Source of the DNA: Lepidodermella squamata
Taxonomy: Eukaryota; Animalia; Gastrotricha
Length of the DNA: 64,000 nt
Reading direction: 5' to 3'
Assembly (NCBI GenBank): GCA_047495785.1
Contig: JBLDXI010000003.1
Span: 682,001 to 746,000, forward strand
This document shows, one piece after another, positions 18,228 to 64,000 of the stretch. Position numbers and translations under genes: made by a program. The notes under the pieces are model-generated. The model was given only the letters and a program-made list of their open reading frames with translations, did not search any database and was not told the origin of the DNA. Within the stretch, counting starts at the first letter, position 1, and each line of letters begins with the position of its first letter.

Positions 18228-19553
18228 TCAATTACTATCGCCGAAATATGGCAAAGATATGTACGACTCGATTCCGCATCTATTGACACCCTTTCGAATC
18301 TTGCCGTAGCCGTTGTAGCCCCACGTCTTGCCCCATGAGTTGCGGATGATCCAGTAATCCTCATTTGTCGTCGGGTCCGTACCATAGCCAACCAACGTGA
18401 CTGCGTGATTGATTTTTGTTGAGCAATCCCTATCGTCCCAAACACCTTCCTTGTAGGCTTCAAACTTATCGGAACCTGCGTCCATACCGACATCAACTGG
18501 TCCGTATTGCAGCGCATTTACCATTCGCTCAGCCATGGAGCTTTGGGGAACCAGGATGATATTATTGAGCGTTTCCGCGCCTTTAATCCAGTAAAATCCG
18601 GTGATGTTGATGGCGACGGCCTTAGTGCTATCCAATTGACACCCGTTGGTGTCTGACATTGTGTAAGCGTAGTCCTCAGCCTTCGCAAACACCTTGTTTC
18701 TGCGATAGTAGGTAGCGCCGTTCAAAAAGGTCCCACCGTTGCAACCGTTGTTGTTGCCAACTCCTTTGGAGCAGTCGACAAGTTGCTGCTCGGACATCGA
18801 AATAGGCGCAGCCTTGTTCTTGATTGCTAGCCTTGACTCGACAACGGCAGTCGTTGCGAAGGAGTAGCAGGATCCACATTTCCTTTGATTCTTAATCGGT
18901 GTCAGGTAGCCTTTGCTACGCCAGTCGAGAACCGTACCGGGCATGACGACTGCATCTTCTTCGGATACTGTTTGGGAAGGCACATTGTTGTAATTCGTGT
19001 CCACTGCGGCATAGGAGTTGAGAGGCCGACTTGTTACGGCTTCTCGAATAACATCTCTCCCCTTCTTGCCCGATGGAACCGGCAAGCAAGTTCGAGCACC
19101 AATTTGATCGTCGTGCTGAAGCTCAATAAAGCAGACTTCGCAGCTATCACTACTTGAACATGTTGTTGACATACGGAAGTTGACACCCCGCTTGCGACGG
19201 CGTTGACTTCCTTCGGTTTCAATCTCCACAGGATCTTCATCCGGCAATGCGCCACGCAAGTTCTTCTTCTTCCATTCTGAGGATTTCGAACTGTATTCGT
19301 TGAGACCATACTTGACATCAGGGTCATCGGTGTTGTTAGCATTCCATTTGTCAATGTCTTCGAGCTCCTCGAGCAGTTCTTCCTCTTCCTCGTCATCAGC
19401 CGCTTCGTCGTCGAAGTTTTTATTGTACTGTTTCTTGAAATCAACCCAGCGATGATCATCTGGAGTGCCAGGCTGCTTGAGGCCACGCCCGCTGGCAGCT
19501 ACGACCACTAGCAGGCATGATAATGCGATGATAGCCAACAAGTAATTCCTCAT
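18228..19553 (-). CDS. Papain-family (C1A) cathepsin L-like cysteine protease, secreted, intronless, copy 1
   Basis: Signal peptide, I29-like prodomain, mature DWRSKG start, QRKCGSCYSF (catalytic Cys), NHAV (His), RNSWG (Asn). Confidence 0.95.
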   Translation of the reverse strand: MRNYLLAIIALSCLLVVVAASGRGLKQPGTPDDHRWVDFKKQYNKNFDDEAADDEEEEELLEELEDIDKWNANNTDDPDVKYGLNEYSSKSSEWKKKNLRGALPDEDPVEIETEGSQRRRKRGVNFRMSTTCSSSDSCEVCFIELQHDDQIGARTCLPVPSGKKGRDVIREAVTSRPLNSYAAVDTNYNNVPSQTVSEEDAVVMPGTVLDWRSKGYLTPIKNQRKCGSCYSFATTAVVESRLAIKNKAAPISMSEQQLVDCSKGVGNNNGCNGGTFLNGATYYRRNKVFAKAEDYAYTMSDTNGCQLDSTKAVAINITGFYWIKGAETLNNIILVPQSSMAERMVNALQYGPVDVGMDAGSDKFEAYKEGVWDDRDCSTKINHAVTLVGYGTDPTTNEDYWIIRNSWGKTWGYNGYGKIRKGVNRCGIESYISLPYFGDSN

Positions 19554-23133: not shown

Positions 23134-24758
23134 ATGTTTATCGAGATTATTGCTAGTGTCGTCAGCATTTTTGGCGGCTCAATTTTCGCATTTTACTGCT
23201 ATCGAAAATTCATCTGCTTTCGAACTTTCAAACGCGAGGGCTTACCTGGTCCAACCCCGCACTGGCTACTCGGAAATTTACCGGCATTTGCCGATGTGAA
23301 AACAAGACATTTGGTACACAACAAATGGAGCAAACAGTACGGCAAATTCTACGGCTATTACATGGGATCAACGCCATGTTTCGCCGTCAGCGATCCAAGA
23401 CTAGCAGAAATTGCGCTCGTCAAGTTGTTTAGTGAGCTACCGTCCAGAAATCCGCCGCCAACTGTCGATCCAGATTCAGATAAAGAACCGTTGTCTATTG
23501 CAAACGCTAGAGGCCCCCGCTGGAAACGACTGCGAGTGATTTGCAGTGCAATATTTTCGTCAGGCAAAATGCGAGCTATGCCATCTTTGATGATGAAGCC
23601 TCAGATAGAATTCCTTAAATTGCTAGCAGAAAAAGCTGCTAAAACCGAGGCATTCGACATTTATCCATCATACAAACTATTGACACTGGATATGATCGCC
23701 GAAACGACTCTGGGTCTTGAACTTAACTCAATCGCGACCAGTGGCAAGCAGGAGAACGTAGTGTTAAACATTTTAAACGACATTTTCAATAGCATGGCCT
23801 CACGATCGTTGTTGTTTCAAATCGGAATAGTATTTCCTGAGCTCAAAACAATAATCGGACCACTGGAACGCATGAGAAGCAAGTTCTTCCAGTCTGGAAT
23901 GTCCTATCACAGTAAGAAATTGGAAAATCTCATGGAACAAGTTATTATTGAGCGGAGAAATAGTGGAAAAACTGATAAGATGGACTTTCTGCAATTAATG
24001 CTTCAACTTGAGGAATCGGTCGCAGATCCGGCTGAATTGGACGGACATAAGGGGTTAACTGTTCAAGAAATTACCGGGCAAGCCAACACCTTCTTAGGAG
24101 CTGGATACGAGGTTAGTCCTAATGGTCTTGAAAGTTCTTGTATTAATGCGAACAACTATTGATATTGCAGAGCTCAAGCACTACACTGGCCTTCGTAACC
24201 CATTTCCTAGCGAATGATTCTAGAGTCCAAGACAAGCTGATCGAAGAGATTGATTACTATTTTTCAGATCCGGATAAAGTACCAGATTACGAAAACGTTG
24301 CTCCACTGAAATACTTGGATGCAGTGATAAATGAGACGCTGCGCATTATTCCGGTAGGCCATGCTACGAATCGAGTCGCCGTGAAGAACACCGAGATTGA
24401 AGGAGTGCGGATAAGCAAAGGCGATGTAATTATGATTGACATCTGGACTATCCACCGCGACGAAGAGCAATGGGGCCCTGTTGATGTCGAGAAATTTTAC
24501 CCCGAGCGATTTCTCGAAGATTACCCTACTACAGCTAACCGGCATCCGGGCGCTTTGCTAACATTCAGTAACGGGCCAAGGATGTGCATAGGAAAGCGAT
24601 TTGCCATGCTGGAAATCAAGATGACTTTCATCAATATTCTTCGGAAATATCGAATAGTGAAAACGAAGGAGACAGGCGATGAACCCAATATTATTGCGAC
24701 TCTGTTGGTAAAGCCAGCAAATGGAGTCTATATAAAGCTCGAAAAACGAAAAATATGA
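23134..24758 (+). CDS. Cytochrome P450, clan 3 (CYP3A/CYP13-like), about 521 aa
   Basis: Exons 23134-24111 and 24171-24758. N-terminal anchor plus PGP, WKRLR, I-helix AGYE|SSST, ETLR, PERF, and heme motif FSNGPRMCIG. Confidence 0.93.
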
Positions 24759-24951: not shown

Positions 24952-26650
24952 TTAAGATAAAATAAAAATACACGCTTTTATTTGACAAACCTGAAGAGGG
25001 CGAAATGCCTGATTGAGCTTTCTCAAATATTCGATCTAAATTGAGAACATTAATGAGTGCGTATTGAGAAGTCGCGAAAAATGGTTATTCTAACCTCTCC
25101 ATTGATATGGCGAGCCAATTCTGTCAAAACTTTGGTGTAGTCGTTAGCACAGTCGTTAGCACAGCAAACAAGTTCAGAAGATTCCATCAACTTGGCTAGT
25201 TTGTTGTTGAAGCGCTCAAACTTCCGCGGCAACTTCAGTGCGGTTTTACGAAGTCGAGCCACTTCCTCCTCGGTAAAATCGACACCGTTCTCCTCGAGTC
25301 GCCAATCGAGTTTACCCAACGCATTAGCAAGACGGCTGTCAAACTGCAAGATGAAAGAAAGGGTATGGTTAGGCATGTTATGAAATGATAAATCGTCAAC
25401 GAAAATGATCGAAAGTAAAAACAAATACTTAATACGATGAAGACAGGGTTCTTAGGGGAAAGTGATCACATCATCCCAGCTGACGTTCTCATCGGAAGGC
25501 CAGCTAGCAAAGTTCACCTTAACATTCAGGCTAACTTTTTAGTAATCATCACCATCAGCATCACTTTGGGATGGCGAAGGTTTCTACATCAACGAAATTT
25601 CGCAGAATCTACTTTACTCAATGATAATGACCCTCATCTGTCAGAATTTCTATTTTCAGTCAGAATTCGAGGCTTTTGCTGAATTATCGGGGATGTTCAA
25701 AAACCTTTCATGATTTATTCACCAAACAATTGGCGGCGACGAATTCTGGAACCTCAAGTCCACTGCAATTCTTTGTTCAATTCTTCATAATTCTTCGTAA
25801 AAGGAATTGGTCAAGAAAAAATCGAAGAAAGTCTTCTCAGAAAATGTTGTTACGTTTGAAAATTAGTGTTTTAATATCTGCATTAATTTTAATAGACCTA
25901 CCACGATCGGCACTAGAACGCTGCGTATTGGCATGGTGGTTCGCCAACTTCAGGCACGTGCATAAATCTCAAAAACTTTTTAGGGTTTTTAGGTTTTAGC
26001 TGTTAGATTAGTCACTTCAAGGTGAAACAAGAATTTATCGCAATTCAAAAGCCCAGATACTGACCTCGATGGACATCACGCTTATTTCGGCTTCCAAAAT
26101 TGAAAGATGCACAGCATGGCATGGTGCGCAGAACCGCTGGTCACAATGCGAGCATAGCGTAGCTGAAGCTGCAGAAACAAAACAAGGCACATGCTGACAT
26201 CGCCAATCCGGGTTGTTGCCAGAGGTATCGCATTTCAACCGTTTCTCGCCAATTTCATAATTTACAGCTTCCCCCTTGCGATCAACGACGACTAAGGTAT
26301 CAATACAACGCTTCATCGCAAAATTAGTCTTATTGCGCGGGTTGCTAAGAGTCTCGTCAGGCTGAATTCGGCGACAATCCGGGTAAGTAAAGACGTCATT
26401 CCCAGCACCCATATCTGATTGAATACCCTTTTTACAAAAGGTGTGATAACAGGATGGCAGAATGGCTGGATCGTCGAGAATTCGCGAACACCTTGCACAG
26501 TGAAGAGACTACTAAAACACGCAATTAATAATAATAATAAATAATAAATGCGCAAAATAATACCGATATGAGCTCGCCCTCAATGATCAGGGGTTGACTC
26601 GAAATGACCACATCGGCGCCGTGTTTCCGCTCACAGGTCGAAGAGGTCAT
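24952..26650 (-). pseudogene. TRIM-ANK family copy 4: degenerate RING, B-box-like and coiled coil, no adjacent ankyrin exon (pseudogene or truncated/decoy form)
   Basis: Exons 26650-26564, 26508-26065, 25343-25095, 25035-24991 are in frame. RING ligands lost (CKKG, YPDC). Donor CAG|GTTTGT at 24990 has no following ANK exon, and read-through stops at 24952. Confidence 0.72.
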
Positions 26651-26843: not shown

Positions 26844-29205
26844 TCATGAAGAAACCAGCTTCGCAGCAAAAAGTTTCGCGAGACCAAATTGATTATTTTC
26901 AATTGCTAATTCAACGGGTGACAAGCCATTTTTGTCTTTCATTTTGAGCAGCCTAGGTTCTCGTTCGATAAACCAATTCACGGTTGTCGCCAAAATCTCG
27001 TCCATGTCCCATTTATCCATAATAATAAAATGCAGCACGTTGTAGCCACACACTTCATCGCAATCAGTCAGTTTTGCGCCATTTCTCAGCAGAATTTCTG
27101 CAGATTCAATGCAATTTCGGCAGTCGAGAATCGGGGAAAGGTGGTTCAGGTCGGCCTTAAACTCCTCCACAAGAATCCTAAGTAATAGCAGCTGCTCGTG
27201 GATACACGCGAATTGAAGCGGTGTTTTGACGTCATCTTTAGCTTCCCTTTCCAACAATTCAGGACATTTTTTCAATAGAAACCGAACAGCATCAGCATTC
27301 TTATCAAAACAAATTTTGTGTAGCAGAGTTATCTGAGATTCTTCATAGGTTTGTAGCAGATTAGCGCCTTTTTTTATCAGGTATTTAGCTATTTTTATTT
27401 GGTTGGAACGCAACGCAACACTGAGCGCATCGGAATCGCCAGCCATTGCATTAACATCTGCACCGCATTCTTCGACAAGGCAACGGACAATGTGTAAACG
27501 AGATTCCTGGCTGAGTTCGGAATCGCATTTCTCAGGCGAATCGACGGCTAGAATCAGTGGAGTGAATTTTTCACCCTCTGGGACTGTGTTAACGAGCTGG
27601 GGATTCAGTTTTCCGATACGAGCGATTAAAGCCGTATTGCCACTACATATTGCTGCGCAAAAAATAGAACCTTTGCATTCGTTGAGATCCGCCCCGGCTT
27701 CGTAAAGACACTCGAACACATCCAAGTGACCAGCGCGAACTGCGTGGTAAAGAGGCGTATGCCCATCACCGGCCATGAATGCAATGTTCGTTTTCCGCTC
27801 TTCGACTAAATATTTGATCACGTCTAAATTACCCTGTTTGACTTGGGTCACGAGTATACTTCGGTCAATGGACTCGATGTCCTCAAAGTTCATTCGACAT
27901 TCATCGAAGAAAAATTTCATCATTTCAAGTGTTCCGGCGTAATGAATCGCGAGTAATCCATGATCATCTGCGCTGTAAATATTCGCGCCTTGCTCATTCA
28001 CCAGGTATCGGGCCACTTCAACGGCATCAGGGGATTCACTCAAGGCAACACTCATCAGCAAAGTTTTATGCGTTTCGTCACGCGAACTGACGTAATTCGC
28101 CAGGTGACGGCGCATTCCTTTGGTTAGCGAATCTCTTTCAAATATCCGCTTCACCTTTCCCAACTTGCCTGTGATCGCAGCTTTGTTTAGGGCTAAGACA
28201 TCTTTGCAAAACTTCGGCCTTCCCAACTCATCAGCAGTGATAGATTCGGCAGATGGAAGTTTATGCTCCTTCAAACTTTCAATCTAAAATTGCAATAGGA
28301 AAATTCAAAGTAAATGCTGAAATTCAACATTCAACTAGCAATACCAAGCCATCTATAAAGTGAGCAAGGTCGAGAACATCCAAGTAATCGCGCAAGCAGC
28401 TAAATAATTCGATGGATTGTATCAGCTCGGAGTACTTCTCTTTAAAAGTTTCAAGCCTACGCGGTAGCTTTTTCGCCATTTTTCGAAGTTGGGCTATTTC
28501 ATGTTCGCTAAGGTCGATAGATTTGTCTGCGAACCGCTGGTCGAGTTGAGCTGAAGCCTTGGCCAGGCGTGAGTCAAACTACGTTAAACAAATTGTGATT
28601 TGCGTGCTTTCATAAAGCGAAGAAAAAGTGACATTACCCCACTAGCAATAATGCCGATTTCAATTTTCAAAACGGAGAGATGCACCGCTAAACAGGGTGG
28701 GCAAAAACGATGATCGCAGTGTGAACATAACGTAGCCGAGGATGCTGAGACCAAAACAGGCACGTGCTGACATTGATGACCCAAATTGTTTCTTACGGGC
28801 ATGCATTTTAAAGGTTTATCGTCGCCTTCATCTTCGTTATCGACGGCAATTAGCGAGTCGACTGTGCGTTTTAGGGCGAAATTCGTCATTTCGCTGAGGC
28901 TTTCCGAAGTCAGGGCGGGTTGGAGTTCGCGACACTCAGGACAGGTAATCGCGTCCTTCCTAGCATTCATAACAAGTTGAATGCAACTTTTGCAGAATGA
29001 GTGATTGCATGTGGGTAAAATGATAGGGTCAACGTAGATCCGCAGGCATATCGAGCAATGAAGAGACTGGGGGAGAAAAATAATTTTTTTAACCTGACGA
29101 TTTGATGCTCTTGTTTACCGAAATCAGCTCACCATCCACGGCCATTGATTGGCTCGAGAGTACCACATCAGGGCCATTTTTTCGAGTCCGGAAATTATTG
29201 GACAT
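26844..29205 (-). CDS. TRIM-like RING / B-box-like / coiled-coil / ankyrin-repeat protein, copy 5 (about 729 aa)
   Basis: Exons 29205-29119, 29066-28638, 28578-28345, 28283-26844. Introns of 52, 59 and 61 nt, GT-AG, phase 0. RING CSIC..CNHSFCKSC..CPEC. Confidence 0.88.
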
Positions 29206-29859: not shown

Positions 29860-30082
29860 ACAATTCAAATGCACCGGGATGACGCGGTCGGCCTGCCATA
29901 TTCAGCTATCAGCAAACGGCATCACCAACAACCAGAGCACACGCGGGAAACCTTTGTTGAGGTAATTCAAAAAATTCAGGAAAAAAGTTCAAGCAAGAAA
30001 AAAGTTCGAGTCGTGCTAACGGGTAATGGCAATTCGAATTCCTGGCAAGGCCGAAACACGTAGGCGACTTGTTATATAAACC
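29860..30082 (+). promoter_or_regulatory. Conserved cathepsin upstream promoter block with TATA box
   Basis: TTCAA(A/C)TGCACCGG..TGAC(A/G)CGG and GTCGTGCTA...GCAA.TC.AATTCCTGGC recur upstream of copies 2, 3 (about 32243-32460) and 4 (about 36775-36992). A TATA-like TATATAAA lies at about 30073. Confidence 0.65.
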
Positions 30083-30144: not shown

Positions 30145-31461
30145 ATGGCGAAGTTAATACTTTTAGTTATTGCAGCATCATGCTTGCTGGTAGTGGTAGC
30201 TGCTAGTGGACGTGGTCTCAAGCAGCCTGGCACTCCTGATGATCCTCGCTGGGTTGATTTCAAGAAACAGTACAATAAAAACTTCGACGACGAATCGGCT
30301 GATGATCAGGAAGAGGAAGAACTGCTCGAGGAGCTCGAAGACATTGACAAATGGAATGCTAACAATACCGATGACCCTGATGTCAAATATGGCCTTAACG
30401 AATTCAGCTCGAAATCAGCGGATTGGAAGAAGAAGAATCTATATGGCGCCGCGGAGGAAGCGGACCCTCAAGAAACTGAGACCGGAGGCAGCCAACGCAG
30501 GAAAAAACGCCAAATGGGCTACTCAATGTCAACATCATGCTCCGCTGAAAGCTGCAACTTCTGCTTCACGGAGACGCATCACGGTGATCAGATGGGTGGT
30601 GAAACCTGCGTACCGTTTCCGACTGGTAGCAACATGCGAGATGTTTTGCGACAGATTATTACAAGCCGGCCTCTCAACTCCTATGCAGCAGTGGATACGA
30701 ACTACAACAATGTGCCCCCTCAAACAGTATCCGCCGAAGACGCAGTCGTCATGCCAGGTACGATCCTCGACTGGCGCAGTAAAGGCTACATGACGCCGTC
30801 AAAGAATCAAAAGCAATGCGGGTCCTGCTACTCTTTTTCCACGACTGCCGTTTTCGAATCAAGACTAGCAATCAAGAACAAGGCTGCCCCTATTTCAATG
30901 TCCGAACAGCAACTTGTTGACTGCTCAAAGGGAATCGCGAACAACAATGGCTGCGGCGGCGGAAACTTACCGAACAGCGCTACCTATTACCGTAGAACCA
31001 AGGTGTTTGCGAAGGCTGAGGACTACGCTTATACAATGTCTGATACCAACGGGTGTCAATTCGATAGCAGCAAGGGCATTGCGCTGAATGTGACCGGATT
31101 TTACACCATAAAAGGCGTGGAAACGCCTAGGAGTGCCACACAAGTTCCTCTAAGTTCCATGGTTCAGAGAATGATAGATGCACTGCAATACGGACCAGTT
31201 GATATCGCCATAAATGGTGCTTCTGAAAAGTTCCAAGCCTACAAAGAAGGCGTTTGGGATGACAAGGAATGCCCAACGAACACCAATCACGCAGTAACTT
31301 TGGTTGGCTATGGTACGGATCCAACGACGAATGAAGAGTACTGGATCATCCGCAACTCATGGGGCACTACTTGGGGCTACAACGGCTACGGCAAGATTCG
31401 CAAGGGTGTCAATAGATGCGGAACCGAGCAGGAAATAGCTTTTCCATATTTCGGTAATTGA
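30145..31461 (+). CDS. Papain-family cathepsin L-like cysteine protease, copy 2
   Basis: Intronless, signal peptide, QKQCGSCYSF / NHAV / RNSWG catalytic motifs intact. Confidence 0.95.
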   Translation: MAKLILLVIAASCLLVVVAASGRGLKQPGTPDDPRWVDFKKQYNKNFDDESADDQEEEELLEELEDIDKWNANNTDDPDVKYGLNEFSSKSADWKKKNLYGAAEEADPQETETGGSQRRKKRQMGYSMSTSCSAESCNFCFTETHHGDQMGGETCVPFPTGSNMRDVLRQIITSRPLNSYAAVDTNYNNVPPQTVSAEDAVVMPGTILDWRSKGYMTPSKNQKQCGSCYSFSTTAVFESRLAIKNKAAPISMSEQQLVDCSKGIANNNGCGGGNLPNSATYYRRTKVFAKAEDYAYTMSDTNGCQFDSSKGIALNVTGFYTIKGVETPRSATQVPLSSMVQRMIDALQYGPVDIAINGASEKFQAYKEGVWDDKECPTNTNHAVTLVGYGTDPTTNEEYWIIRNSWGTTWGYNGYGKIRKGVNRCGTEQEIAFPYFGN

Positions 31462-32534
31462 TTATCACGCTTTATAATCGAAACTATATGATCTATGGAT
31501 TCATCCAAGCTTTTTGTTCTGTACTAGTACTACAACCGATAAGAACAGTGTGAGCTAAAAAAGAAATTAAACTCAATTGAAATAAGACTGAATGAAGATC
31601 GAAATAGCAATAAAAAATCACGAAATAACACCATTCATATCAAACTATTGTTTTCAACAGTGGGGCAATCAAGACTTATTTCTGATAAAGAATGTCTTTT
31701 AGCGGAACCAAATTTAAATTTTAAATTATGCTGATCAATCATAACATCATTGAAAGTATCATAACATCGAAAAGTGGTTTCAGGCCCATTGAAAATCCCA
31801 AGCCTTCTTTGGTTCCGCTGTAGTCAAAGTCTGCTACAGTGTGCTAAAAGTGAAATCCATTAAAACGCTGCAATAGCTATATCTGAAATTACAGGACGCA
31901 CTTTTGAAATAGAGCATGGACGGTTAACACTTGCTTCAATGTGCATAACACCGAGCTTTATGGAAGACATGTCCAAGCTTTTGCATTCTATTACTATCCA
32001 ACCATATTTGGTCTATCGAATTTAGTTTTTTCTAATAAAGCGATCCATTGTCTTGTTGTCTATAGAATGCTGTAAATTTTTCAACCTTTTCTGATTTCTG
32101 ATACAGCCATTGAGCAAGAGAATTGGAAATTTTCTTGGCACGTTTCTTTCAAAATGCTCTGGTTTTGGCCTAAACAAGCGCGTAAAAATAACACGCTCCA
32201 AAAACGCCTGAATAGATGATGCTATAACTGCCACATGTTCAAATTCAACTGCACCGGCTTGACACGGCTAGCACACCGTATTTTATTATAATAAATAGTA
32301 TTGGCGACAACCAGGGCCGGCATGCATGGGTGAACGCTCTATATTAACGATTCGAGAAACTGCAGGAGAAAAATTTCGCGCGCAAAAAGTCGTGCTACGG
32401 GGGATGGCAACTCCAATTCCTGGCAAGGCCGAAACACGTTGGCGACCTGTTATATTAACCTTGCAGCAAAAACATCCAACAGCATTCAACCTTCATTCTT
32501 TCTTGCCTTATGAGAGCTGTCAATTTCGTTTATC

Positions 32535-33851
32535 ATGACGAATTTTTTATTGTCATTTATCACAGCATCATGCCTGCTAGTGGTCGTGGCCGCGGGAGGA
32601 CGGGGCCTTAAGCAGCCTGGCACTCCCGATGATCCTCGCTGGGTTGATTTCAAGAAACAGTACAATAAAAACTTTGACAACGAAGACGCTGATGATCTAG
32701 AAGAGGAAGAGCTGCTCGAGGAGCTCGAAGACATTGACAAGTGGAATGCGAACAATACCGATGACCCTGATGTCAAGTATGGTCTTAACGAATTCAGCTC
32801 CAAATCTGATGAATGGAAAAACAAGAACTTATTTGGCGACTCCGAAGAGGAGAAGCCGACATTGACGACAGCTGAAGGTAGCCGGCGTAGAAAGAAGCGC
32901 GATCTCTCTTTCTCGATGTCAACATCTTGCAGCGCAACAGGCTGCACGCTTTGCGTCACTGAATTTCATTCGGGCGATCGAATAAGTGAAAAGTGTGTAC
33001 CATCTCCTCCGAACGCAGATGCTACAGCTATCGTCCGACAAATAGTGACGACCCGGCCCCTCAATTCCTACGCCGCGGTTGACACAAATTACAATAATGT
33101 GCCAGTACAAACAGTTTCTGCAGAAGATGCAGTCGTCATGCCAGGGACTATAATGGACTGGAGGAGCAAGGGCTATTTGACGCCGGGTAAAAATCAGCAA
33201 GAATGCGGCTCCTGCTATTCCTTTGCGACAACTGCTGTTTACGAGTCCAGATTGGCGATCAAAAACAAGGCTGCCCCGATTTCAATGTCTGAACAGCAGC
33301 AGGTAGATTGCTCAAAAGGAGTGGGTACCAACAAGGGATGCAACGGAGGCAGCTTGACGAGCAGTACCAGCTACTACCGCAAAACCAAGGCGTACGCGAA
33401 AGCTGAGGACTACCCATACACTATGACTGATAAGAATAACTGTCAGTTCGACAGTAGCAAGGGCGTTCCGATTAATGTAACAGGGTTTTACTGGGTGGAT
33501 GGAGCTGAAAACCCGAGCGGCACAAATGATATACCACAGAGCTCAATGGTTCAACGAATGATAGATGCACTCCAATATGGACCGTTCGACGTTGGTATGG
33601 ACGCAAGCTCCAAAAAGTATGGTGCCTACAAAGAAGGAGTGTGGGATGACAAGGAGTGCGCAACTAAGACGAATCACGCTGTTGTTTTGGTCGGCTACGG
33701 AACAGATCCAACGACCAATGAAGACTACTGGATTATCCGTAATTCCTGGGGCAAGACCTGGGGCTACAACGGTTATGGCAAGATTCGCAAGGGAGTCAAT
33801 CGATGCGGCATCGAATCCCGCATCTCTTTCCCGTATTTTGGCGATAATTGA
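32535..33851 (+). CDS. Papain-family cathepsin L-like cysteine protease, copy 3
   Basis: Intronless, signal peptide, QQECGSCYSF / NHAV / RNSWG intact. Confidence 0.95.
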   Translation: MTNFLLSFITASCLLVVVAAGGRGLKQPGTPDDPRWVDFKKQYNKNFDNEDADDLEEEELLEELEDIDKWNANNTDDPDVKYGLNEFSSKSDEWKNKNLFGDSEEEKPTLTTAEGSRRRKKRDLSFSMSTSCSATGCTLCVTEFHSGDRISEKCVPSPPNADATAIVRQIVTTRPLNSYAAVDTNYNNVPVQTVSAEDAVVMPGTIMDWRSKGYLTPGKNQQECGSCYSFATTAVYESRLAIKNKAAPISMSEQQQVDCSKGVGTNKGCNGGSLTSSTSYYRKTKAYAKAEDYPYTMTDKNNCQFDSSKGVPINVTGFYWVDGAENPSGTNDIPQSSMVQRMIDALQYGPFDVGMDASSKKYGAYKEGVWDDKECATKTNHAVVLVGYGTDPTTNEDYWIIRNSWGKTWGYNGYGKIRKGVNRCGIESRISFPYFGDN

Positions 33852-34886: not shown

Positions 34887-37067
34887 GATAAAATGGCATT
34901 CTAGACCTTAAAGCCTTCAGGAACTCTTAGGTATTTCCAGAAATTGTAATTGCAACTTCATCGGCCAACTTCCCGGCTTAATAGAAAAAACTTCTACACT
35001 TCGGGTTGTCTCAGATTTATTGGAAAACCAACGAGGTCAAGGCTATTTGCCGAGCAATTCAAGTTTTTCAACCAAGACACGCATTATGTTCAAGCAACAA
35101 TGATCCCGTCATTCAAATCATCATTTTTCAAAGTTTCAGCCCTGCCGGAGAAACTCATTTCTCCTCATTTAAAGGTATACGCAATCCAGTCGTGGACGTC
35201 TTGAATTCGTTTCAGCAGAAAATGCTTATGTAAATTAAGAAGAATTCAAAGGATTATCAGAATCTCAGAAATGAGACACCTTCAGATCAACTATTAGATG
35301 GGAAATGCCACAACTTGAATACCAATCAGATAAAAATAAGGCTCAGTCAGATTTTTATATTTCCGTAAACGACAATAAATGCCGCATCCTGAATAAAGGC
35401 CGCACGCGAGTAATCGCCTGTTGTCTCTTATATTTATTTCCACTTTTCTAAATATTTCATTGCAGATTAATATATTTATGATCGTAGCTTTTCGATAACA
35501 TGAATTTATCCCGCGATTATGACAGCCATTAATTTAATTCAATCTAATTTAATTGGACCAAACTTCAAATTTTTAATAACAAATAATAAGCGGAAATCTC
35601 TCAACAAACCCTGCTTTAGAACCTTAATGTGAAGTTCGCTGAAACCTAGAGTCGATGCATCCATATTTTGTTTTAGAAAGATTCGGTCAGCTAAGGTACA
35701 ACAGGATACTTCGTGATGTGATGAATGCAACTTTTATCTGCTCGCAACACTTCAATCAAGTTTGTATAGAGGGCGCATTTTAGCTGTTTCGATCGAATCC
35801 CATTCTAACGAGATTACCTCACACTAGATCTATCGACTGGTGGCAAAGAAATCGTCATGGTCATGGAGTTACTGAAAACTGCGAGGCAATACAATTATTG
35901 GCCATACCTTTTCGGATGTTCCACATTCTTCATAGTCGTTGAAATGCTGGATATTTAAAATTATAAATTTCCTATACAGATTAGAGTAGCATGAAAAGCA
36001 TCAAATATAACAGAATAGCATAAGAAAATTTCTTGGATATCCAAGAGCGAGGTCACTCCTCATGGCGTTTATAAGACGAAAGACACATCATTTATAAATA
36101 CGTATTTCCATGAACATGATAGCATGATTTCACAATTAATCTCATCCTGTGTCATTTGGTACCAAATTTTTTAATTGTTACCCGAGAGCGATGAGATAAT
36201 CGAATAACGAATTATATAAGAACTACCTGAATCATAATCGCTTAAAACAAAGCATTGTCAAACTGTAGAAGCGACGACCTGATAACTAAAACTTACATCA
36301 CGGTGCATCGCTAGTCGAAAAAAATTGGAAATGGCCACTCATCAACTGATGCTTCAACGAGTCGAAACATTGTAGGCAGGAAATGATAAGCTCAGCATCT
36401 CTATATGATGAAAGTTTCCAGTAATAAAAAAACGCATGGCCTTTTGAGCAACTTTTTTAATTGAAATTTTAAATACAACCTCGTAAACACATGTTTCAAG
36501 CTACAGCCGAAGGTTAACCATTCTGTAATTATTCAATCATCTGGTCTATCGAATCAAGTTTTTCAATTAAGCCAATCTGCTGCATCGTTACAATGACTTA
36601 AACATTGTAGAATGCTGTACACAAGGAATTTCTGACGTGGAATTTTCGGACGTTTTTATGGCATAATTTTCTTTCGAAATACTTTCTTTCACATTTTTTA
36701 CAGCCACGAACAACGAAAATACACACTCAATAAACGCATGCGTAGATGATGCTATAATCTCTCACTTTCCATAATTCAAATGCACCGGCTTGACACGGCC
36801 AGCACGCCGCATTTTATTAAACGTCAATGCTGACAACTAGGGCACACATGGCAGGAATGCCAGATATTAAAAATCCAAGAAACCTCCAGGAAAAAATGCG
36901 AAGCACGAAAAAAACTCTCGGGTCGTGCTACAAGGGCTAGCAATTCGAATTCCTGGCGAAACAGAAGCATGCCGGCCGCTGGTTATTTAAACCCGGCATC
37001 AAAGCCATTTAACAACAGTCAAACGCCAAATTTTCTTGTCTCGTGAAAGCTGTCAATTTTGCTTACA

Positions 37068-38384
37068 ATGGCGAAATTTATATTGTCATTAATCGCAGCG
37101 TCATGCTTGCTTTTGGTTGCAGCTGCTAGTGGACGCGGTCTCAAGCAGCCTGGCACTCCTGATGATCCTCGCTGGGTTGATTTCAAGAAACAATACAATA
37201 AAAATTTTGACAACGAAGACGCTGATGACCAAGAAGAGGAAGAACTGCTCGAAGAACTCCAAGACATCGACAGCTGGAATGGTAACAACACCGATGACCC
37301 TGATGTCAAATATGGCCTCAACGAATTCAGCTCCAAATCGGATGAGTGGAAGCAGAAGAACTTATTTGGCGACTCGGAAGAGGACCCGCCGACATTAACG
37401 AAAGTTGAAGGTGACCAGCGTAGAAAGAAGCGAGAAATCCAATTCTCGTATTCGACATCGTGTCTGAACACTGACTGCACGCTTTGCATCTATGAATATC
37501 ATTCAGGCGAACAAGTGGGCGGGAAGAACTGTGTAAAAATCGCCTCGACGGTAGATGCGGATGCTTACATTCGTGACATGGTTACAAAGCGCCCTGTCAA
37601 TTCTTACCCACCGGCGGATAACAATTTCAACAACGTGCCTACTCAAACCGTCTCGGAAGAAGATGCTGTCGTCATGCCTGGCACGATAATGGACTGGCGA
37701 AGCAAGGGCTATTTGACCCCGATCAAAAATCAGCAACAATGCGGTTCCTGCTACTCTTTTTCAACAACTGCTGTTTACGAGTCAAGATTGGCCATCAAAA
37801 ACAGGGCTGCCCCGATTTCAATGTCGGAGCAGCAGCAGGTGGATTGCGCCAAAGGAGTAGGATCCAACAGAGGATGCAACGGAGGCAGCATGTCGAGCAG
37901 TACCAGCTACTACCGCAGAGCTAAGGCATTCGCAAAAGCTGAGGATTATCCTTACACAATGACTGATACCAACGGTTGTCAGTACGACAGCAGCAAGGGC
38001 GTTCCGATGAATGTAACTGGGTTTTTCTGGGTGAAAGGAGTTGATAACCCGACCAACACGATTGAGGTGGCGCAGAGCTCAATGGTCAGACGAATGATAG
38101 ATGCGCTCCAATACGGACCGATCGACGTTGGAATGGACGCTGCTTCTAAAAAGTTCAGTGCCTACAAGGAAGGAGTGTGGGACGACAAGGAATGCTCAAC
38201 CAAGACGAATCACGCTGTCGTTCTAGTCGGCTACGGAACAGATCCGACGACCAATGAAGACTACTGGATTATCCGTAATTCCTGGGGCAAGACATGGGGA
38301 TACAACGGTTATGGCAAGATTCGCAAGGGTGTCAATCGATGTGGCATTGAAACCAGCATCCAATTGCCCTATTTCGGCAATTAA
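37068..38384 (+). CDS. Papain-family cathepsin L-like cysteine protease, copy 4
   Basis: Intronless, ATG at 37068 (MAKFIL, aligned with paralogs), catalytic motifs intact. Confidence 0.95.
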   Translation: MAKFILSLIAASCLLLVAAASGRGLKQPGTPDDPRWVDFKKQYNKNFDNEDADDQEEEELLEELQDIDSWNGNNTDDPDVKYGLNEFSSKSDEWKQKNLFGDSEEDPPTLTKVEGDQRRKKREIQFSYSTSCLNTDCTLCIYEYHSGEQVGGKNCVKIASTVDADAYIRDMVTKRPVNSYPPADNNFNNVPTQTVSEEDAVVMPGTIMDWRSKGYLTPIKNQQQCGSCYSFSTTAVYESRLAIKNRAAPISMSEQQQVDCAKGVGSNRGCNGGSMSSSTSYYRRAKAFAKAEDYPYTMTDTNGCQYDSSKGVPMNVTGFFWVKGVDNPTNTIEVAQSSMVRRMIDALQYGPIDVGMDAASKKFSAYKEGVWDDKECSTKTNHAVVLVGYGTDPTTNEDYWIIRNSWGKTWGYNGYGKIRKGVNRCGIETSIQLPYFGN

Positions 38385-39552: not shown

Positions 39553-40869
39553 ATGAGAATTTATCTATTGGCTATCGTCTCAGCATCATGCCTACTTGCC
39601 CTCGTAATGGCTAACGGCCGTGGTCTCAAGCAGCCTGGAACCCCCGACGATCCTCGTTGGGTTGATTTCAAGAAACAATTCAATAAAAACTACAACGACG
39701 AAGCGGCTGACGACGAGGAAGAGGAGGAACTGCTCGAAGAGCTCGAAGACATCGACAGCTGGAACGCTAACAACACCGATGACCCTGATGTCAAGTATGG
39801 TCTCAACGAATTCAGCTCCAAATCGGATGCGTGGAAGCAGAAGAACCTGTTTGGCGCTGCGGAAGACCCGAAGCCAACAGTGAGAAAGGCTGAAGGTGGT
39901 GGAAGCAGGAAGAAGCGAGATGTCAATTTTTCGTGGAGTACGAGCTCCGATGGCACGACCAGTACTGTTTGCATCACAGAAGAACATTCCGGTGATAAAA
40001 TGGGTGAACCCAAATGCTTAACAGTGCCCGACGGAACAAACGTTGAAGCTATTATTCGTGACATGGTTTCAAAACGTCCACTGAATTCCTATCCACCAGA
40101 GGACAACAATTTCAACAACGTGCCTACTCAAACCGTCTCGGAAGAAGATGCAGTCGTCATGCCTGGCACTTCAATGGACTGGAGAAGCAAGGGCTATTTG
40201 ACCCCGATTAAAAATCAGCAACAATGTGGTTCTTGCTACTCTTTTGCTACAACTGCAGTTTACGAGTCTAGATTGGCTATCAAAAACAAGGCTGCCCCAG
40301 TTTCAATGTCTGAGCAGCAGCAGGTGGATTGCTCACAAGGAATAGGTTCCAACAAAGGATGCAACGGAGGAAGCTTGACTAGCAGTACCACCTACTACCG
40401 CAGAACCAAGGCATACGTGAAAGCTGAGGATTACCCTTATACAATGTCCGATAGCAATGGTTGTCAGTTCGACAGCAGCAAGGGCGTTCCGTTGAACGTA
40501 ACAGGGTTTTACTGGATAATAGGAGCTGAAAACCCGAGCAGCATAAATGATGTACCACAGAGCTCAATGGTCCAACGAATGATAGATGCACTCCAATACG
40601 GACCGTTCTACGTTGCGATGGACGCAAACAAAAAGTTTGAAGCCTACAAGGAAGGAGTATGGGACGACAGAGAATGCATGACCAAGACGAATCACGCCGT
40701 CGTTCTAGTCGGCTACGGAACAGATCCGACGACCAATGAAGACTACTGGATTATCCGTAATTCCTGGGGCAAGACATGGGGCTACAACGGCTACGGCAAG
40801 GTTCGCAAGGGTATCAATCGTTGTGGCATCGAATCCCACATCTCTTTCCCATACTTCGGCAATAGCTAA
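39553..40869 (+). CDS. Papain-family cathepsin L-like cysteine protease, copy 5
   Basis: Intronless, signal peptide, catalytic motifs intact, TATAAAA at about 39457. Confidence 0.95.
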   Translation: MRIYLLAIVSASCLLALVMANGRGLKQPGTPDDPRWVDFKKQFNKNYNDEAADDEEEEELLEELEDIDSWNANNTDDPDVKYGLNEFSSKSDAWKQKNLFGAAEDPKPTVRKAEGGGSRKKRDVNFSWSTSSDGTTSTVCITEEHSGDKMGEPKCLTVPDGTNVEAIIRDMVSKRPLNSYPPEDNNFNNVPTQTVSEEDAVVMPGTSMDWRSKGYLTPIKNQQQCGSCYSFATTAVYESRLAIKNKAAPVSMSEQQQVDCSQGIGSNKGCNGGSLTSSTTYYRRTKAYVKAEDYPYTMSDSNGCQFDSSKGVPLNVTGFYWIIGAENPSSINDVPQSSMVQRMIDALQYGPFYVAMDANKKFEAYKEGVWDDRECMTKTNHAVVLVGYGTDPTTNEDYWIIRNSWGKTWGYNGYGKVRKGINRCGIESHISFPYFGNS

Positions 40870-42851: not shown

Positions 42852-44389
42852 TCAAACATCCGATACATTATCGCGACCCTGGTAAGTTCTGAAACCAGAC
42901 CTTGAAACAGCAGCAGCTTGGAGGTCGGCGAACGAATACTCGCTAGGTAAAAGTGACCCGCTCCGGGATGATGATGGCTTCAAAAGCGGGGCCGGCCACC
43001 CAGATGGTGTATCAGCTTCGGGTGTGAATGAAGTATTGGGCGAATGGGAGAAGGGGAGTGAGCCGTTTTTGAAGCCATTGCGATCCGTGTCGTAGGCAGG
43101 GATTTTCATGACATCAGCATGCTGGGGCAAAGTTTCCTTCTTTTTGTATTCGTCATATTTTGCCTAGAGGATAGAAAAAGCGAGAAGATTAGCAAAATAA
43201 TTCCCACATCATGAACTAATGAGTAGACTTCGGTGCAGCGAACAACGATTTCAACTCGATTTCTCTTTACCTTCGTCTTCCACTATCAATAAATGTCTGT
43301 TCATTGACCATACAGTCTTCCCAACAATTTATATATGGCATATTAAATTACAGATGCAACTCACTTTATTGTAGAGGAAGACGCCAGTCAAAGCAAGAGA
43401 CATTCCAAAAATGTTCGAAGGCGTCACTGGATTACGTAGGACAACAATAGAAATGATGATGACAGCAACACGCTTGCTGGAATTTGTGACGGCGTAGCCC
43501 AGAGAACTCAGCATGGCAATCAATGAGAAAGCAATCTTATTCTGGAGAAAGTTGCACATGCCATCCATAAACAAGAAAAGCAGCGCACGAGGCCAAGCGA
43601 CTTTCGAATTCGGCTTCAAACGAAAAAGAAATTGAGCGTAATTCATTAAATAGAAAACGATGAACGTACATCGGCCACATCGGCAACAATTCTGAATAGA
43701 TCATAAAATATCCATACTGGAAGCGCCATTACCACAGCCAGCCGGGTGAGTAGGAGAAGCAGCCTCAAATGGTGAATGCCAGATTCTTTCAACACCTATT
43801 GTAAGACATAATTACAAACTGGTTTCGGCAAAGCAGTCGGTAAACGAACCTTTTTAGAATAAATATTTTGAATTGTGAATACTAATGTCGAAATGATTGC
43901 ACTGATGAAGCCGACCATGTCAAACGAGAGCTCAGTAGCTGATGCAACAACAACACCAGCGACAATAATGACAAGACTGGCATAAACTTGGGCAGTATGG
44001 TGTTCTTTCAGAACAAACCGCGATATCAGAACTGTGAAAAGAGGCAGAGTAGCTTTCACAGTGTGGGCGAATGAGACCGGAACTTTCCAAATGCTAACTC
44101 GTGCTGAGAATGTAGATATAAATTTGCCGAAGGCGAGTGGTACGATCCAGCGCAGGTAATAAGCGCGAGGAATTGTGTGATCATCACGAGGTATACCCCA
44201 AAAATACAGCATTGGTGGAAGATATGCCGCAATTGAGAACAACTGACACATGGCCACGGTTAGAGGAAAGGGCATGTTTGACAGCAACATCTTTTCTATC
44301 ACCCCACCAGTGGAGCTTATGGTGTACCAGAGAAGACATAGGCCGAGTACTTTGATGTGCAAAGGACTAAGCCAGCGTCGGAGCGGCAT
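42852..44389 (-). CDS. SLC35E1: Solute carrier family 35 member E1 homolog (nucleotide-sugar/triose-phosphate translocator family), about 408 aa
   Basis: Exons 44389-43850, 43795-43670, 43613-43365, 43163-42852. Motifs SIWKVPVSFAHTVKATLPLF, ATELSFD, QNIYSKKVLKESGIHHLRLL and YAVTNSSKR. Confidence 0.88.
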
Positions 44390-44759: not shown

Positions 44760-46281
44760 ATGATGATGATGATAACGGCGTTCACACCCTCTAGGAGGAT
44801 TTTGCCGCCTTCGACGCGGAGGCACCAATACGAGCAGTCAATCTTCGCCATCCATTGCGGTCGCTGGCGAGATCACGTAGAATCGCTAAATCCACTTTGT
44901 TGGCTAGGTCTGGAGACCAGATCTTCTTCGCATAATTGTGGTCCTCGTGAATTGCAGTGAGATGTGCATGCGCTTCTCTCAGTTCTTTCGCGAGAACTTT
45001 CGGTAGGGTGGTTAAACCTCGACCAAGATGAGGTTGGCCGCCGGCTCGAAAGTACAGGTCCATCGCCATCTGTGCTGGTGTAGTCGCTGGTAGGCGGAGG
45101 ATATGGCCGAAGAGGCGCCATCTTCTTCTTCTGGCGGTCTCCGACGCTGGACTTGTACCGGTCTTTGAGTAGAGCTCAGCATTTGAGATGATCTCTGGGT
45201 AGTATATTCCTAGAGCCCGTCGCATCTGATTCCGATGGTGGGCATCCATTCTTTCGTCTTGATCTGCTGTCAGTCCTCTTGTTTCGCAGTTGTACATCAG
45301 GATCGAAAAGACTTTGCAGTTGTAGATCCGTATTTTGCGGTCCCAAGAGATGTTAGCTTTCCAGACCGATTTCAATTTGTCAAATGCGAATGAAGATAAC
45401 TGAATTCGATGATCTAGGTCCTCCTTGTCGCCTAGGAGGCTGCCGAGCTTCTTAACCATGCGCCAGGGCTCTTCGGTCCCGTTCAGGTTTCTGATGACTC
45501 TGGTTTTCTCTGTCTTGTTGACGTTCACTTGCAGGTTCCACTTCTTCAGACTATTAGCCGATATGGTTGTTGTAAATTAGCCGATATTGTTGGAGAGCAA
45601 GTAAAGTGGGCTCCCCCCGCATTCTTCGTCAGATTAGCGGATCTCTTCAACGAGATGGCCCGCACCAACGCCAACTGGGACTTAAACACTGCAAAACTAG
45701 TACTGCTTCAAAAACCGGGTAAACCGAAAGGCCCCATAAGCAACCTGAGACCCATTTTCCTGCTCAACGTATTCAGAAAAATGCTGTCAAGTGTTGTTCT
45801 TCAACGCATCAAACCTAAAATATCAAACTACCTGTCACGTTCGCAATGCGCATACACCGCAGGCAGATCGACGGGTGATGCGGTGTGGACACACAAATGG
45901 TTAACGGCGAGAATCATAAAATTCAAGGAACAATTCTTCATTCTTGGCATTGACCTTAGCAGCGCATTCGATACAATTGATCGCAGTAAGCTCCTCAAGA
46001 TTCTGGGCGAATTGATTGATGAAACGGATCTCAAAATTGTCGAACTTCTGCTCTCAAACACTACCCTCAACATCGGTTTCAACAAATGCATGAAAATCAT
46101 CAACACCTTCGTTGGCTCACCGCAAGGGGACGCTCTCAGCCCGGTACTCTTCATCGTTTACCTGGAAGCTGCCCTTCGAGAGCTCAGATGCATGACTCCT
46201 CACAATGAAAACATGCCTCGCGAGCTGATCTACGCAGACGATACGGACATGTTTGCCACCGACAAGGCTCAAGCCGACAGC
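44760..46281 (-). mobile_element. RTE-like non-LTR retrotransposon, 5'-truncated with 5' inversion, 12-bp TSD
   Basis: TSD AATCACCGCTCG at 44748-44759 and 46282-46293. (CAT)n tail on the minus strand at 44760-44773. The 3' RT half is on the minus strand (about 45575-44791). The upstream RT half (NLRPIFLL, DLSSAFD, GSPQGDALSP, YADD) is on the plus strand (about 45575-46281). Confidence 0.92.
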
Positions 46282-63598: not shown

Positions 63599-64000
63599 GT
63601 AAGTTTCATTTTTTTGCCACCCTCGAAGTTTCAATATCAAGTCAGAACAATTTGAGATTGAATATCCTATGGCAAAATTGATATTGTAACAACCCGGAAC
63701 AAATTTATTTGGAATCTCCTCTCAAACGTTTTTCAGTTGTTTTTTGCAGAGCAAAAATCGAACGCAATTTTTCCGATTTGAAATTTTTGAAAATCAGGAA
63801 CATAATCCCGACTAAAATGTACTACTAATCATCTAGAAAACGTTAACTAAGTCAATTTCTTCTGGTTGATTGAGGCGAAATCCGTTACCCGAGCTGACTT
63901 ATCAAACTTTGAAAATTGAAATTCCACCGCAGAAAATTGGAAATTTAGGCTGGTTCTTAAATTTTCGACTTTGCGAGGTGTCTTGAAACTAGGACATTCT

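What the first reader, a model, noticed from the sequence alone, without database searches (positions are those of the whole stretch)
30496..30680. Furin site plus hypervariable disulfide module inserted between prodomain and catalytic domain of all five cathepsins
After the I29-like prodomain each protease has R-(K/R)-K-R, then a roughly 55-aa segment (S-T-x-C-x4/5-C-x2-C-x2-E...C...R-x3-4-RP(L/V)NSY) and a conserved linker before DWRSKG. Ordinary cathepsin L has only a short linker here. The segment is the most variable part of proteins that are otherwise near-identical. Inference: convertase cleavage releases the inhibitor and leaves or liberates a small beta-rich disulfide domain that could serve as a targeting module or a separate bioactive peptide.
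Basis: partly seen in the sequence, partly recalled or inferred. Interest (0 to 1): 0.78.

Follow-up and report, generated by a model that had tools for sequence, protein, structure and literature searches.

The report
Cathepsins with convertase site and extra mini-domain
Five neighbouring genes of a small invertebrate encode cathepsin-L-type proteases whose inhibitory propeptide carries an extra ~79 residues found in no other public protein: a conserved furin-type cutting motif followed by a fast-evolving, disulfide-stapled mini-domain, which suggests a different way of switching these enzymes on, although no cleavage or expression could be tested.

Summary
The window has exactly five intact, intronless papain-family (C1A) genes. 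Each encodes a signal peptide, a degenerate I29 propeptide, an acidic disordered stretch, an invariant R-x-K-R motif, a 51-53 aa cysteine module, a very conserved 33-aa linker and a complete catalytic domain.

- **Control set:** in 60 other C1A zymogens the same stretch is 31-70 aa (median 39) and never holds R-x-[KR]-R. Here it is 117-119 aa.
- **Variability:** the module is the most variable part, at 39% identity against 79-89% elsewhere. ML omega is 0.46 against 0.08-0.16, so constraint is relaxed and positive selection is not shown.
- **Fold:** AlphaFold gives the same three-strand-plus-helix fold within the zymogen and alone (pLDDT about 80).
- **Relatives:** none appeared in Pfam, PDB sequences or folds, the ESM Atlas, 1.84 billion protein representatives, or viral and metagenome contigs.

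My best reading (0.5) is a lineage-specific propeptide insertion that puts activation under a furin-type convertase and leaves the module on the enzyme at least transiently. Release as a free peptide is less likely, because no downstream convertase site exists.

Earlier scan notes report the same motif plus insert in EGF-cathepsin genes elsewhere in this genome.

The parts
30145..31461 (+). Cathepsin gene g1, intronless CDS, 438 aa (the copy the finding points to)
   Evidence: ORF; Pfam I29 + Peptidase_C1; AF2 model matches procathepsin L/K/H
32535..33851 (+). Cathepsin gene g2, 438 aa
37068..38384 (+). Cathepsin gene g3, 438 aa from the ATG at 37068 (the mechanical ORF starts at a TTG at 37059)
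39553..40869 (+). Cathepsin gene g4, 438 aa; the copy lacking Cys132 and Cys137
18228..19553 (-). Cathepsin gene g5 (minus strand), 441 aa
30208..30444 (+). g1 I29-like propeptide core (aa 22-100): helices 34-42, 50-72 and 92-98, very acidic (net -10), ERFNIN motif degenerate, G-x-N-x-F kept
   Evidence: Pfam I29; DSSP; phmmer alignment to Fasciola procathepsin L1 propeptide 2-67; charge
30445..30495 (+). g1 variable acidic stretch (aa 101-117). Its first ~11 residues align with the arm that follows helix alpha3 in ordinary zymogens; which residues cross the active-site cleft is inferred
   Evidence: alignment occupancy; pLDDT 45-64
30496..30510 (+). g1 polybasic motif RRKKR (aa 118-122), candidate furin-type convertase site, cut predicted after R122
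   Evidence: pLDDT below 50 over 109-123
32886..32900 (+). g2 polybasic motif RRKKR
37419..37433 (+). g3 polybasic motif RRKKR
39904..39918 (+). g4 polybasic motif SRKKR
19188..19202 (-). g5 polybasic motif RRRKR
30511..30666 (+). g1 variable module (aa 123-174): strands 124-132, 137-145 and 148-158, helix 164-174; Cys132, 137, 140, 155
   Evidence: AF2 in context and alone; variability
32901..33053 (+). g2 variable module
37434..37589 (+). g3 variable module
39919..40074 (+). g4 variable module (two cysteines only)
19029..19187 (-). g5 variable module (one extra residue)
30667..30765 (+). g1 conserved linker (aa 175-207), omega 0.08. Its last ~20 residues align with the end of ordinary propeptides. 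Equivalents: g2 33054-33152, g3 37590-37688, g4 40075-40173, g5 18930-19028(-)
30766..31458 (+). g1 catalytic domain (aa 208-438) with Gln222, Cys228, His382, Asn404 and six disulfide cysteines
   Evidence: invariant columns; Pfam; phmmer to cathepsin L/V/K
30073..30080 (+). TATA box (TATATAAA) about 65 nt upstream of the g1 ATG. All five copies have a TATA element and a shared upstream block at the same place

Best explanation
Each gene encodes a secreted, catalytically complete cathepsin-L-type zymogen. Its propeptide has been lengthened at one point, between the arm that follows helix alpha3 and the last ~20 residues that lead into the mature N-terminus.

The added ~79 residues comprise:
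- a disordered acidic stretch ending in an invariant R-x-K-R;
- a 52-aa module that folds by itself as three strands plus a helix, held by two disulfides (Cys132-Cys137 and Cys140-Cys155);
- the first part of a strongly conserved linker.

Proposed mechanism (inferred, not shown). A furin-type proprotein convertase cuts after R-x-K-R in the secretory pathway. This severs a complete I29 inhibitor (aa 22-122, the size of an ordinary whole propeptide) from module-linker-enzyme. Activation is then started by a convertase rather than only by acid autoprocessing. The I29 piece then dissociates or is degraded. The module and linker stay at the enzyme's N-terminus, at least transiently. They are later either kept as a paralogue-specific surface or trimmed autocatalytically within the conserved linker.

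Shown here: the architecture, the conservation pattern, the predicted fold and the absence of relatives. Inferred: the cleavage, the order of events, the disulfide pairing and any role of the module.
For: Insert present in five of five copies. It keeps the reading frame, has only two one-codon indels and has omega below 1, so it is translated sequence under constraint.

Motif:
- P4 R, P2 K and P1 R are invariant while the flanks are 39-43% identical.
- P1' is Q, D, E, D or G and P2' is M, L, I, V or V.
- There is one such motif per protein and none at this place in 60 other C1A zymogens.
- pLDDT is below 50 over 109-123.
- The bottom of the S2 pocket is Ile431, aligned to Ala214 of cathepsin L/V. 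Self-cleavage after K-R is therefore unlikely, and an outside protease is the simpler reading.

Module:
- The topology is the same within the zymogen (pLDDT 65-85) and alone (mean pLDDT 80).
- Core hydrophobic positions and S129, T130, C140, E143, C155 and R169 are kept while surface positions vary.
- Cys132 and Cys137 are lost together in g4, which fixes the pairing.

Linker omega is 0.08, below the catalytic domain's 0.16.

Precedents: furin-activated MMPs with RRKR/RxKR in the prodomain (PMC3102199); papain-like SERA6, cut first by the subtilase SUB1 and then by itself (PMC8167364).
Against:
- I could not read the model's coordinates or PAE. Where the module sits relative to the active-site cleft is therefore unknown.
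- The structure predictions rest on five sequences for the insert.
- I29 propeptides inhibit in trans, so a cut need not activate the enzyme.
- A polybasic patch could instead bind glycosaminoglycans.
- Omega of 0.46 fits plain relaxed constraint as well as a diversifying surface.
Confidence: 0.5

Rival explanations
1. Tolerated spacer. The insert is a fast-drifting loop with no role of its own, removed and discarded with the rest of the propeptide. The basic motif is just one of several places where the propeptide gets cut.
For: Lowest identity in the protein and omega 0.46, with no sign of omega above 1. No relatives or known fold.
Against: - The cysteine framework and hydrophobic core are conserved, and the module is confidently predicted to fold on its own.
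- The insert is kept at the same length in five paralogues whose synonymous sites are saturated.
- The linker next to it is the most constrained part of the protein.
- Per unchecked scan notes, the same feature occurs in another cathepsin subfamily of this genome.
Confidence: 0.18
2. Second latency lock or folding helper. After the convertase cut, the module and linker still block or shape the active site. They co-evolve with each paralogue's substrate cleft and are removed only by a second, autocatalytic step.
For: - The linker is extremely conserved (omega 0.08).
- The substrate-pocket region around residues 260-280 also varies between paralogues.
- SERA6 is a precedent for a two-step activation, subtilase then self.
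Against: No similarity to any known cysteine-protease inhibitor fold among the listed fold matches. Five sequences are too few to test co-variation. The position of the module in the model is not available.
Confidence: 0.14
3. Bifunctional precursor. The module is freed as a separate, hypervariable disulfide peptide, using the logic of conotoxin or antimicrobial-peptide precursors: conserved signal and pro region, basic site, then a variable Cys framework.
For: The first 75 codons are 83-96% identical at nucleotide level, even between clades, while the module falls to 46-64%. A basic site lies directly before the module.
Against: - There is no convertase-type site after the module. The invariant Arg is followed by Pro and lacks a P4 Arg, and only two copies have K-R there.
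- The module is covalently followed by a highly conserved linker and an intact enzyme.
- One copy has lost a disulfide.
Confidence: 0.08
4. The polybasic motif is a glycosaminoglycan-binding patch, not a convertase site. It tethers the zymogen to matrix or promotes surface-assisted autoactivation.
For: A run of four or five basic residues in an otherwise very acidic pro region. Glycosaminoglycans are known to modulate (pro)cathepsins (abstract of PMC12771359).
Against: The conservation pattern is position-specific, as for furin: P4, P2 and P1 are fixed while P3 and P5 are free. Consistent P1' and P2' residues follow. Charge alone would not require this.
Confidence: 0.08
5. The insert is not part of the protein (an unrecognised intron or annotation artefact).
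For: None found. No RNA data were available.
Against: The frame is open in all five copies across about 230 nt at only 46-64% nucleotide identity. Indels occur only in whole codons, and omega is below 1.
Confidence: 0.02

Closest known systems
Procathepsin L-type zymogens (PDB 1CS8, 1CJL, 3QT4, 7PCK, 6CZK, 2O6X)
   Same: Same overall fold (Foldseek E about 1e-24, TM 0.82-0.86 by target). Same I29 helices, G-x-N-x-F strand, catalytic Gln/Cys/His/Asn and three disulfides.
   Different: About 79 extra residues between helix alpha3 and the mature N-terminus, a convertase-type motif and an extra folded module. The ERFNIN motif is degenerate, with only the last Ile and Asn kept, and helix alpha2 is strongly acidic.
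Furin-activated metalloprotease zymogens (MMP-11, MT-MMPs)
   Same: An RRKR/RxKR motif between the inhibitory prodomain and the enzyme lets a convertase activate the zymogen inside the secretory pathway (PMC3102199). This is the same logic proposed here.
   Different: A different protease clan and a different latency mechanism (cysteine switch). There is no extra module after the site. Cleavage is proven there and only inferred here.
Plasmodium SERA6, activated by the subtilase SUB1 and then by itself
   Same: A papain-like protease whose maturation is started by a subtilisin-family protease and finished autocatalytically (PMC3488066, PMC8167364).
   Different: SUB1 is not a furin-type convertase and its site is not polybasic. 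SERA architecture is unrelated to the insert here, and no sequence similarity was found.
Cathepsin H mini-chain
   Same: A piece of the propeptide's C-terminal part is retained on the mature enzyme and changes what it does (PMC6059440, abstract only).
   Different: My knowledge of cathepsin H, not taken from the abstract: the mini-chain is eight residues, disulfide-linked to the enzyme. Here the module has an even number of cysteines of its own and the catalytic domain has no spare cysteine, so no covalent tether is expected.
EGF-cathepsin genes elsewhere in this genome (scan notes s1-422038, s1-395161)
   Same: The notes describe a degenerate propeptide, a polybasic motif and a small Cys-containing insert of about 85 aa before a cathepsin-L-type domain.
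   Different: Those genes carry EGF repeats in front. I could not read their sequences, so homology of the inserts is untested.
Conotoxin or antimicrobial-peptide precursors
   Same: A conserved signal and pro region, a basic site, then a hypervariable region with a conserved cysteine framework.
   Different: Here the variable module is followed by a conserved linker and a full enzyme, with no downstream processing site or stop.

Membership tests
Peptidase family C1A (papain/cathepsin L-like) | Catalytic Gln19, Cys25, His159, Asn175 (papain numbering) | tested here: met
   Gln222, Cys228, His382 and Asn404 are invariant in the five copies and in the 65-sequence alignment
Peptidase family C1A (papain/cathepsin L-like) | Peptidase_C1 domain and papain fold | tested here: met
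   Pfam PF00112 E 1e-57 to 1e-61; Foldseek to cathepsins L/V/K/S, TM about 0.9 by target
Peptidase family C1A (papain/cathepsin L-like) | Three conserved disulfides of the mature domain | tested here: met
   Cys225, 260, 270, 304, 376 and 425 are invariant or nearly so; the pairing itself was not tested
Cathepsin L-like subfamily (I29 propeptide) | I29 propeptide with ERFNIN and GNFD motifs | tested here: inconclusive
   Pfam I29 is borderline, 21.4-26 bits against a cut-off of 24.4. Only the final Ile and Asn of ERFNIN are kept, and G-L-N-E-F-S-S replaces GxNxFxD. The fold still matches solved propeptides.
Cathepsin L-like subfamily (I29 propeptide) | Short arm (about 25-40 aa) from helix alpha3 to the mature N-terminus | tested here: not met
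   117-119 aa here against a median of 39 (range 31-70) in 60 homologues
Furin-type proprotein-convertase substrates | R-x-K/R-R motif | tested here: met
   RKKR or RRKR in five of five copies at one alignment position
Furin-type proprotein-convertase substrates | Motif exposed, protein in the secretory pathway | tested here: inconclusive
   Prediction only. pLDDT is below 50 over 109-123. The hydrophobic N-terminal leader was judged by eye, and N-x-T sequons are conserved.
Furin-type proprotein-convertase substrates | Cleavage actually occurs at the motif | not testable with these tools
Known C1A subfamilies with extra modules or retained pro-pieces (cathepsin F cystatin-like region, cathepsin C exclusion domain, RD21 granulin, cathepsin H mini-chain) | Extra region recognisable as one of these domains | tested here: not met
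   - No Pfam family on the insert.
- No PDB sequence match.
- No fold match above noise.
- hhalign against ordinary C1A zymogens gives probability 0.1%.
- 0 hits in 1.84 billion representatives.
Toxin/antimicrobial-peptide-type precursors | Variable Cys peptide bounded by processing sites or the C-terminus | tested here: not met
   A site exists upstream only. Downstream there is R-P without a P4 Arg, then the conserved linker and the enzyme.

The most novel reading that the evidence does not exclude
After the convertase cut, the module stays on the active enzyme as a paralogue-specific recognition surface. This lineage would then have a family of extracellular cathepsins that are switched on by a convertase and aimed at different targets by a rapidly evolving N-terminal mini-domain of a fold and family not seen elsewhere. 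That would be a new mode of regulating and addressing papain-family proteases.
Probability: 0.18. Interest if true: 0.8.

Novelty: new variant of a known kind. Interest (0 to 1): 0.55.

Why it matters
Papain-family cathepsins are, to my knowledge, generally activated by acid-driven autoprocessing or by other lysosomal proteases. I found no report of a cathepsin-L-type zymogen with a convertase motif and an added folded module inside the propeptide (literature searches).

If the cut occurs, these enzymes could be activated in the secretory pathway at neutral pH, as furin-activated metalloproteases are. That would change where and when a cathepsin can act.

The module is an orphan. It had no relative among 1.84 billion proteins and is confidently predicted to fold, so it is a candidate new small domain. 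The tandem family gives five natural variants for testing what it binds or blocks.

The finding also adds to a pattern noted by the scan: this genome has many elaborated cathepsins and furin-type motifs.

Tried and rejected
- **Relatives of the insert.** All searches were blank:
  - word search on residues 95-210;
  - Pfam at E up to 10;
  - PDB sequences;
  - ESM Atlas features, best 0.83, within the noise range;
  - exhaustive profile search of 1.84 billion representatives, 0 hits;
  - viral contigs;
  - two metagenome scans, one with the insert profile and one with the full-length profile.
- **Exact-protein look-up.** Not on record.
- **Fold of the isolated module.** Foldseek against PDB gave a best E of 0.16. 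VIA-align against 48,161 chains gave a best Z of 4.5, below the usual background. Atlas TM of 0.6-0.7 was only to the first strand-strand-strand-helix of RNase-H-like and UvrC domains, a common arrangement and not a relationship.
- **Internal duplication.** A phmmer by-product aligned part of the linker with cathepsin V residues 96-122 at 1 bit. hhalign of the insert profile against 58 ordinary C1A zymogens gave probability 0.1%. Rejected.
- **Positive selection.** NG86 and ML codon models give omega of 0.3-0.6 for the module, never above 1. Synonymous sites are saturated in most pairs, and five sequences are too few for site models. Not shown.
- **Docking of the module.** Model coordinates and PAE are not exposed, so this was not tested.
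- **Genome paper.** The paper on Lepidodermella squamata, the organism named by earlier scan notes, does not mention cathepsins or proteases.
- **Unused search.** One homologous-protein search was left unused because the exhaustive search had already answered the question.

Full report
**What is there**

The window is eukaryotic. It holds ankyrin-repeat genes, a cytochrome P450, a Nipped-B fragment and reverse-transcriptase remnants.

It contains exactly five full-length, intronless genes for papain-family proteases and no fragments (tblastn). They lie at 18228-19553(-), 30145-31461(+), 32535-33851(+), 37068-38384(+) and 39553-40869(+).

- **Domains:** all five have Pfam Peptidase_C1 (E 1e-57 to 1e-61) and a borderline I29 propeptide match of 21-26 bits against a cut-off of 24.4.
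- **Catalytic residues:** Gln222, Cys228, His382, Asn404 and the six disulfide cysteines are invariant, so these look like active enzymes.
- **Promoters:** all five have a TATA element and a shared upstream block at the same distance from the ATG. This fits working genes.

**The observation**

Position 30496 is the first base of the R118 codon of the 30145 gene. The next fifteen bases encode RRKKR.

All five proteins share one layout (g1 numbering):

| Residues | Segment |
|---|---|
| 1-21 | leader |
| 22-100 | I29-like region |
| 101-117 | variable acidic stretch |
| 118-122 | basic motif |
| 123-174 | Cys-containing module |
| 175-207 | conserved linker |
| 208-438 | catalytic domain |

I tested the claim that ordinary cathepsin L has only a short linker against 60 other C1A zymogens from the word search.

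- Their stretch from helix alpha3 to the DWR motif is 31-70 aa (median 39), and none holds R-x-[KR]-R there.
- The five genes here have 117-119 aa and one such motif each, at the same position.
- In the joint alignment, the homologues' residues align to 101-111 and 186-207 and leave a gap over about 112-185.

The insertion therefore lies inside the C-terminal arm of the propeptide, after the part that follows helix alpha3.

- The 39553 copy begins the motif with Ser and lacks the first two cysteines.
- The proteins are 70-76% identical overall.
- The variable zone starts at residue 101.

**Variability**

The module is 39% identical on average, against 79-89% for the I29, linker and catalytic parts. 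It is the least conserved of all 367 windows of its size.

| Segment | ML codon omega | Tree length per codon |
|---|---|---|
| I29 | 0.11 | 1.3 |
| Module | 0.46 | 5.95 |
| Linker | 0.08 | 2.7 |
| Catalytic domain | 0.16 | 2.2 |

The module is thus under relaxed constraint, not free drift, and I could not show positive selection. Synonymous sites are saturated in most pairs, and five sequences are too few for site models.

Nucleotide identity falls to 46-64% in the module. In the first 75 codons it is 83-96%, even between the two clades. In the linker, g2 groups with g1 rather than with g3 and g4. Both points suggest gene conversion around a module that stays diverse.

**The motif**

- **Conservation:** P4 Arg, P2 Lys and P1 Arg are invariant. 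P3 and P5 vary.
- **Flanks:** P1' is Gln, Asp, Glu, Asp or Gly, and P2' is Met, Leu, Ile, Val or Val. To my knowledge this pattern suits furin-type convertases.
- **Accessibility:** the motif lies in the only long low-confidence stretch of the zymogen model, with pLDDT below 50 over 109-123.
- **Self-cleavage:** the residue at the bottom of the S2 pocket is Ile431, aligned to Ala214 of cathepsins L and V. The enzymes themselves are therefore poor candidates for cutting after Lys-Arg.

**The module**

AlphaFold2 on a 65-sequence alignment gave a zymogen model with mean pLDDT 83 that matches solved procathepsins L, K, H and S.

In it the insert forms strands 124-132, 137-145 and 148-158 and helix 164-174 (pLDDT 65-85). 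Folded alone from five sequences, the module gave the same topology at mean pLDDT 80.

Core hydrophobic positions and Ser129, Thr130, Cys140, Glu143, Cys155 and Arg169 are kept while surface positions vary. Cys132 and Cys137 are lost together in one copy, which keeps Cys140 and Cys155. This argues for the pairs 132-137 and 140-155 (inference).

The catalytic domain has no spare cysteine, so a covalent tether like the cathepsin H mini-chain is not expected.

**No relatives**

Every search for relatives of the insert was blank:

- word search of residues 95-210;
- Pfam;
- PDB sequences;
- Atlas features;
- an exhaustive profile search of 1.84 billion representatives, 0 hits at E up to 0.001;
- viral contigs and two metagenome scans.

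Fold searches gave only background matches: Foldseek best E 0.16, VIA-align best Z 4.5, and Atlas TM 0.6-0.7 to a generic strand-strand-strand-helix unit.

A profile-profile comparison with ordinary C1A zymogens gave probability 0.1%. The insert is therefore not a recognisable duplicate of another part of the protein, nor a known pro-region.

The closest whole-protein relatives are only 35-41% identical, and only over the catalytic domain.

**Mechanism**

The piece from residue 22 to the motif is about 100 aa, the size of an ordinary whole propeptide. I therefore think a convertase cut after residue 122 severs a complete I29 inhibitor from module-linker-enzyme.

Activation would then be started in the secretory pathway, as in furin-activated metalloproteases (PMC3102199). 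A second, autocatalytic step could follow, as in SERA6 after SUB1 (PMC8167364).

Several things argue against free release of the module by convertases and for a role of the linker:

- The module is not followed by a convertase site.
- The arginine at its end is followed by proline.
- The linker after it is the most constrained part of the protein.

Whether the module is kept as a recognition surface, acts as a second lock, or is simply discarded remains open. All processing steps are inferred.

**Limits**

- Model coordinates and PAE were not available to me.
- The organism is given in earlier scan notes as probably the gastrotrich Lepidodermella squamata. I did not test this. The published genome paper for that species does not mention cathepsins.
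- The scan had already noted the same motif plus insert in EGF-cathepsin genes on other pieces of this genome. I could not compare those sequences.

**Verdict**

This is a real, well-defined and apparently undescribed variant of the cathepsin-L zymogen. Interest is moderate to good, pending protein-level evidence.

Noticed in passing
window 30145-30370 and the same part of the other four genes: The first ~75 codons (leader and I29 start) are 83-96% identical at nucleotide level, even between the two paralogue clades. The catalytic domain is only 67-80% identical between clades. In the linker, g2 groups with g1 instead of g3 and g4. This suggests gene conversion or mosaic evolution within the array.
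   Followed up: partly
window 29990-30080 and the equivalent upstream regions of the other four genes: All five genes share a conserved upstream block (about -120 to -80) ahead of a TATA box. It is a candidate common promoter element.
   Followed up: partly
window 2536-3774(-), 8706-10121(-), 14855-16147(-), 26844-28274(-): Four ankyrin-repeat genes flank and interleave the cathepsin array.
   Followed up: partly
window 26035-26412(-), 28584-28970(-): Two similar small ORFs (125 and 128 aa) share a Cys/His-rich motif and have no Pfam match. They lie on either side of the ankyrin gene at 26844-28274.
   Followed up: partly
window 23134-24758(+): A cytochrome P450 gene is split into two overlapping reading frames near 24159 (Pfam p450 positions 2-282 and 278-460). 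This is either a very short intron or a frameshift.
   Followed up: no
window 44791-46308: Retroelement remnants: an RVT_1 reverse-transcriptase ORF on the plus strand (45529-46308) abuts a minus-strand ORF with a weak DUF6451 match (44791-45528).
   Followed up: no
window 32486-32959(-), 37019-37489(-), 39690-40064(-): Long antisense ORFs with poly-Ser runs overlap the start of the cathepsin genes. They are most simply the mirror image of the Glu-rich propeptide helix, not genes.
   Followed up: no
window 30931-30990 (g1 aa 263-282) and equivalents: The loop after the conserved Gly-Gly, which lines the S2/S3 substrate pockets in papain-family enzymes, differs between the five paralogues. They probably differ in substrate preference.
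   Followed up: no
window 43329-44389(-), 53569-55065(+): A triose-phosphate-transporter-family gene (with an intron) and a Nipped-B C-terminal exon lie downstream of the array. Several long ORFs (47272-49358, 59263-60159, 62860-63681) have no Pfam match.
   Followed up: no
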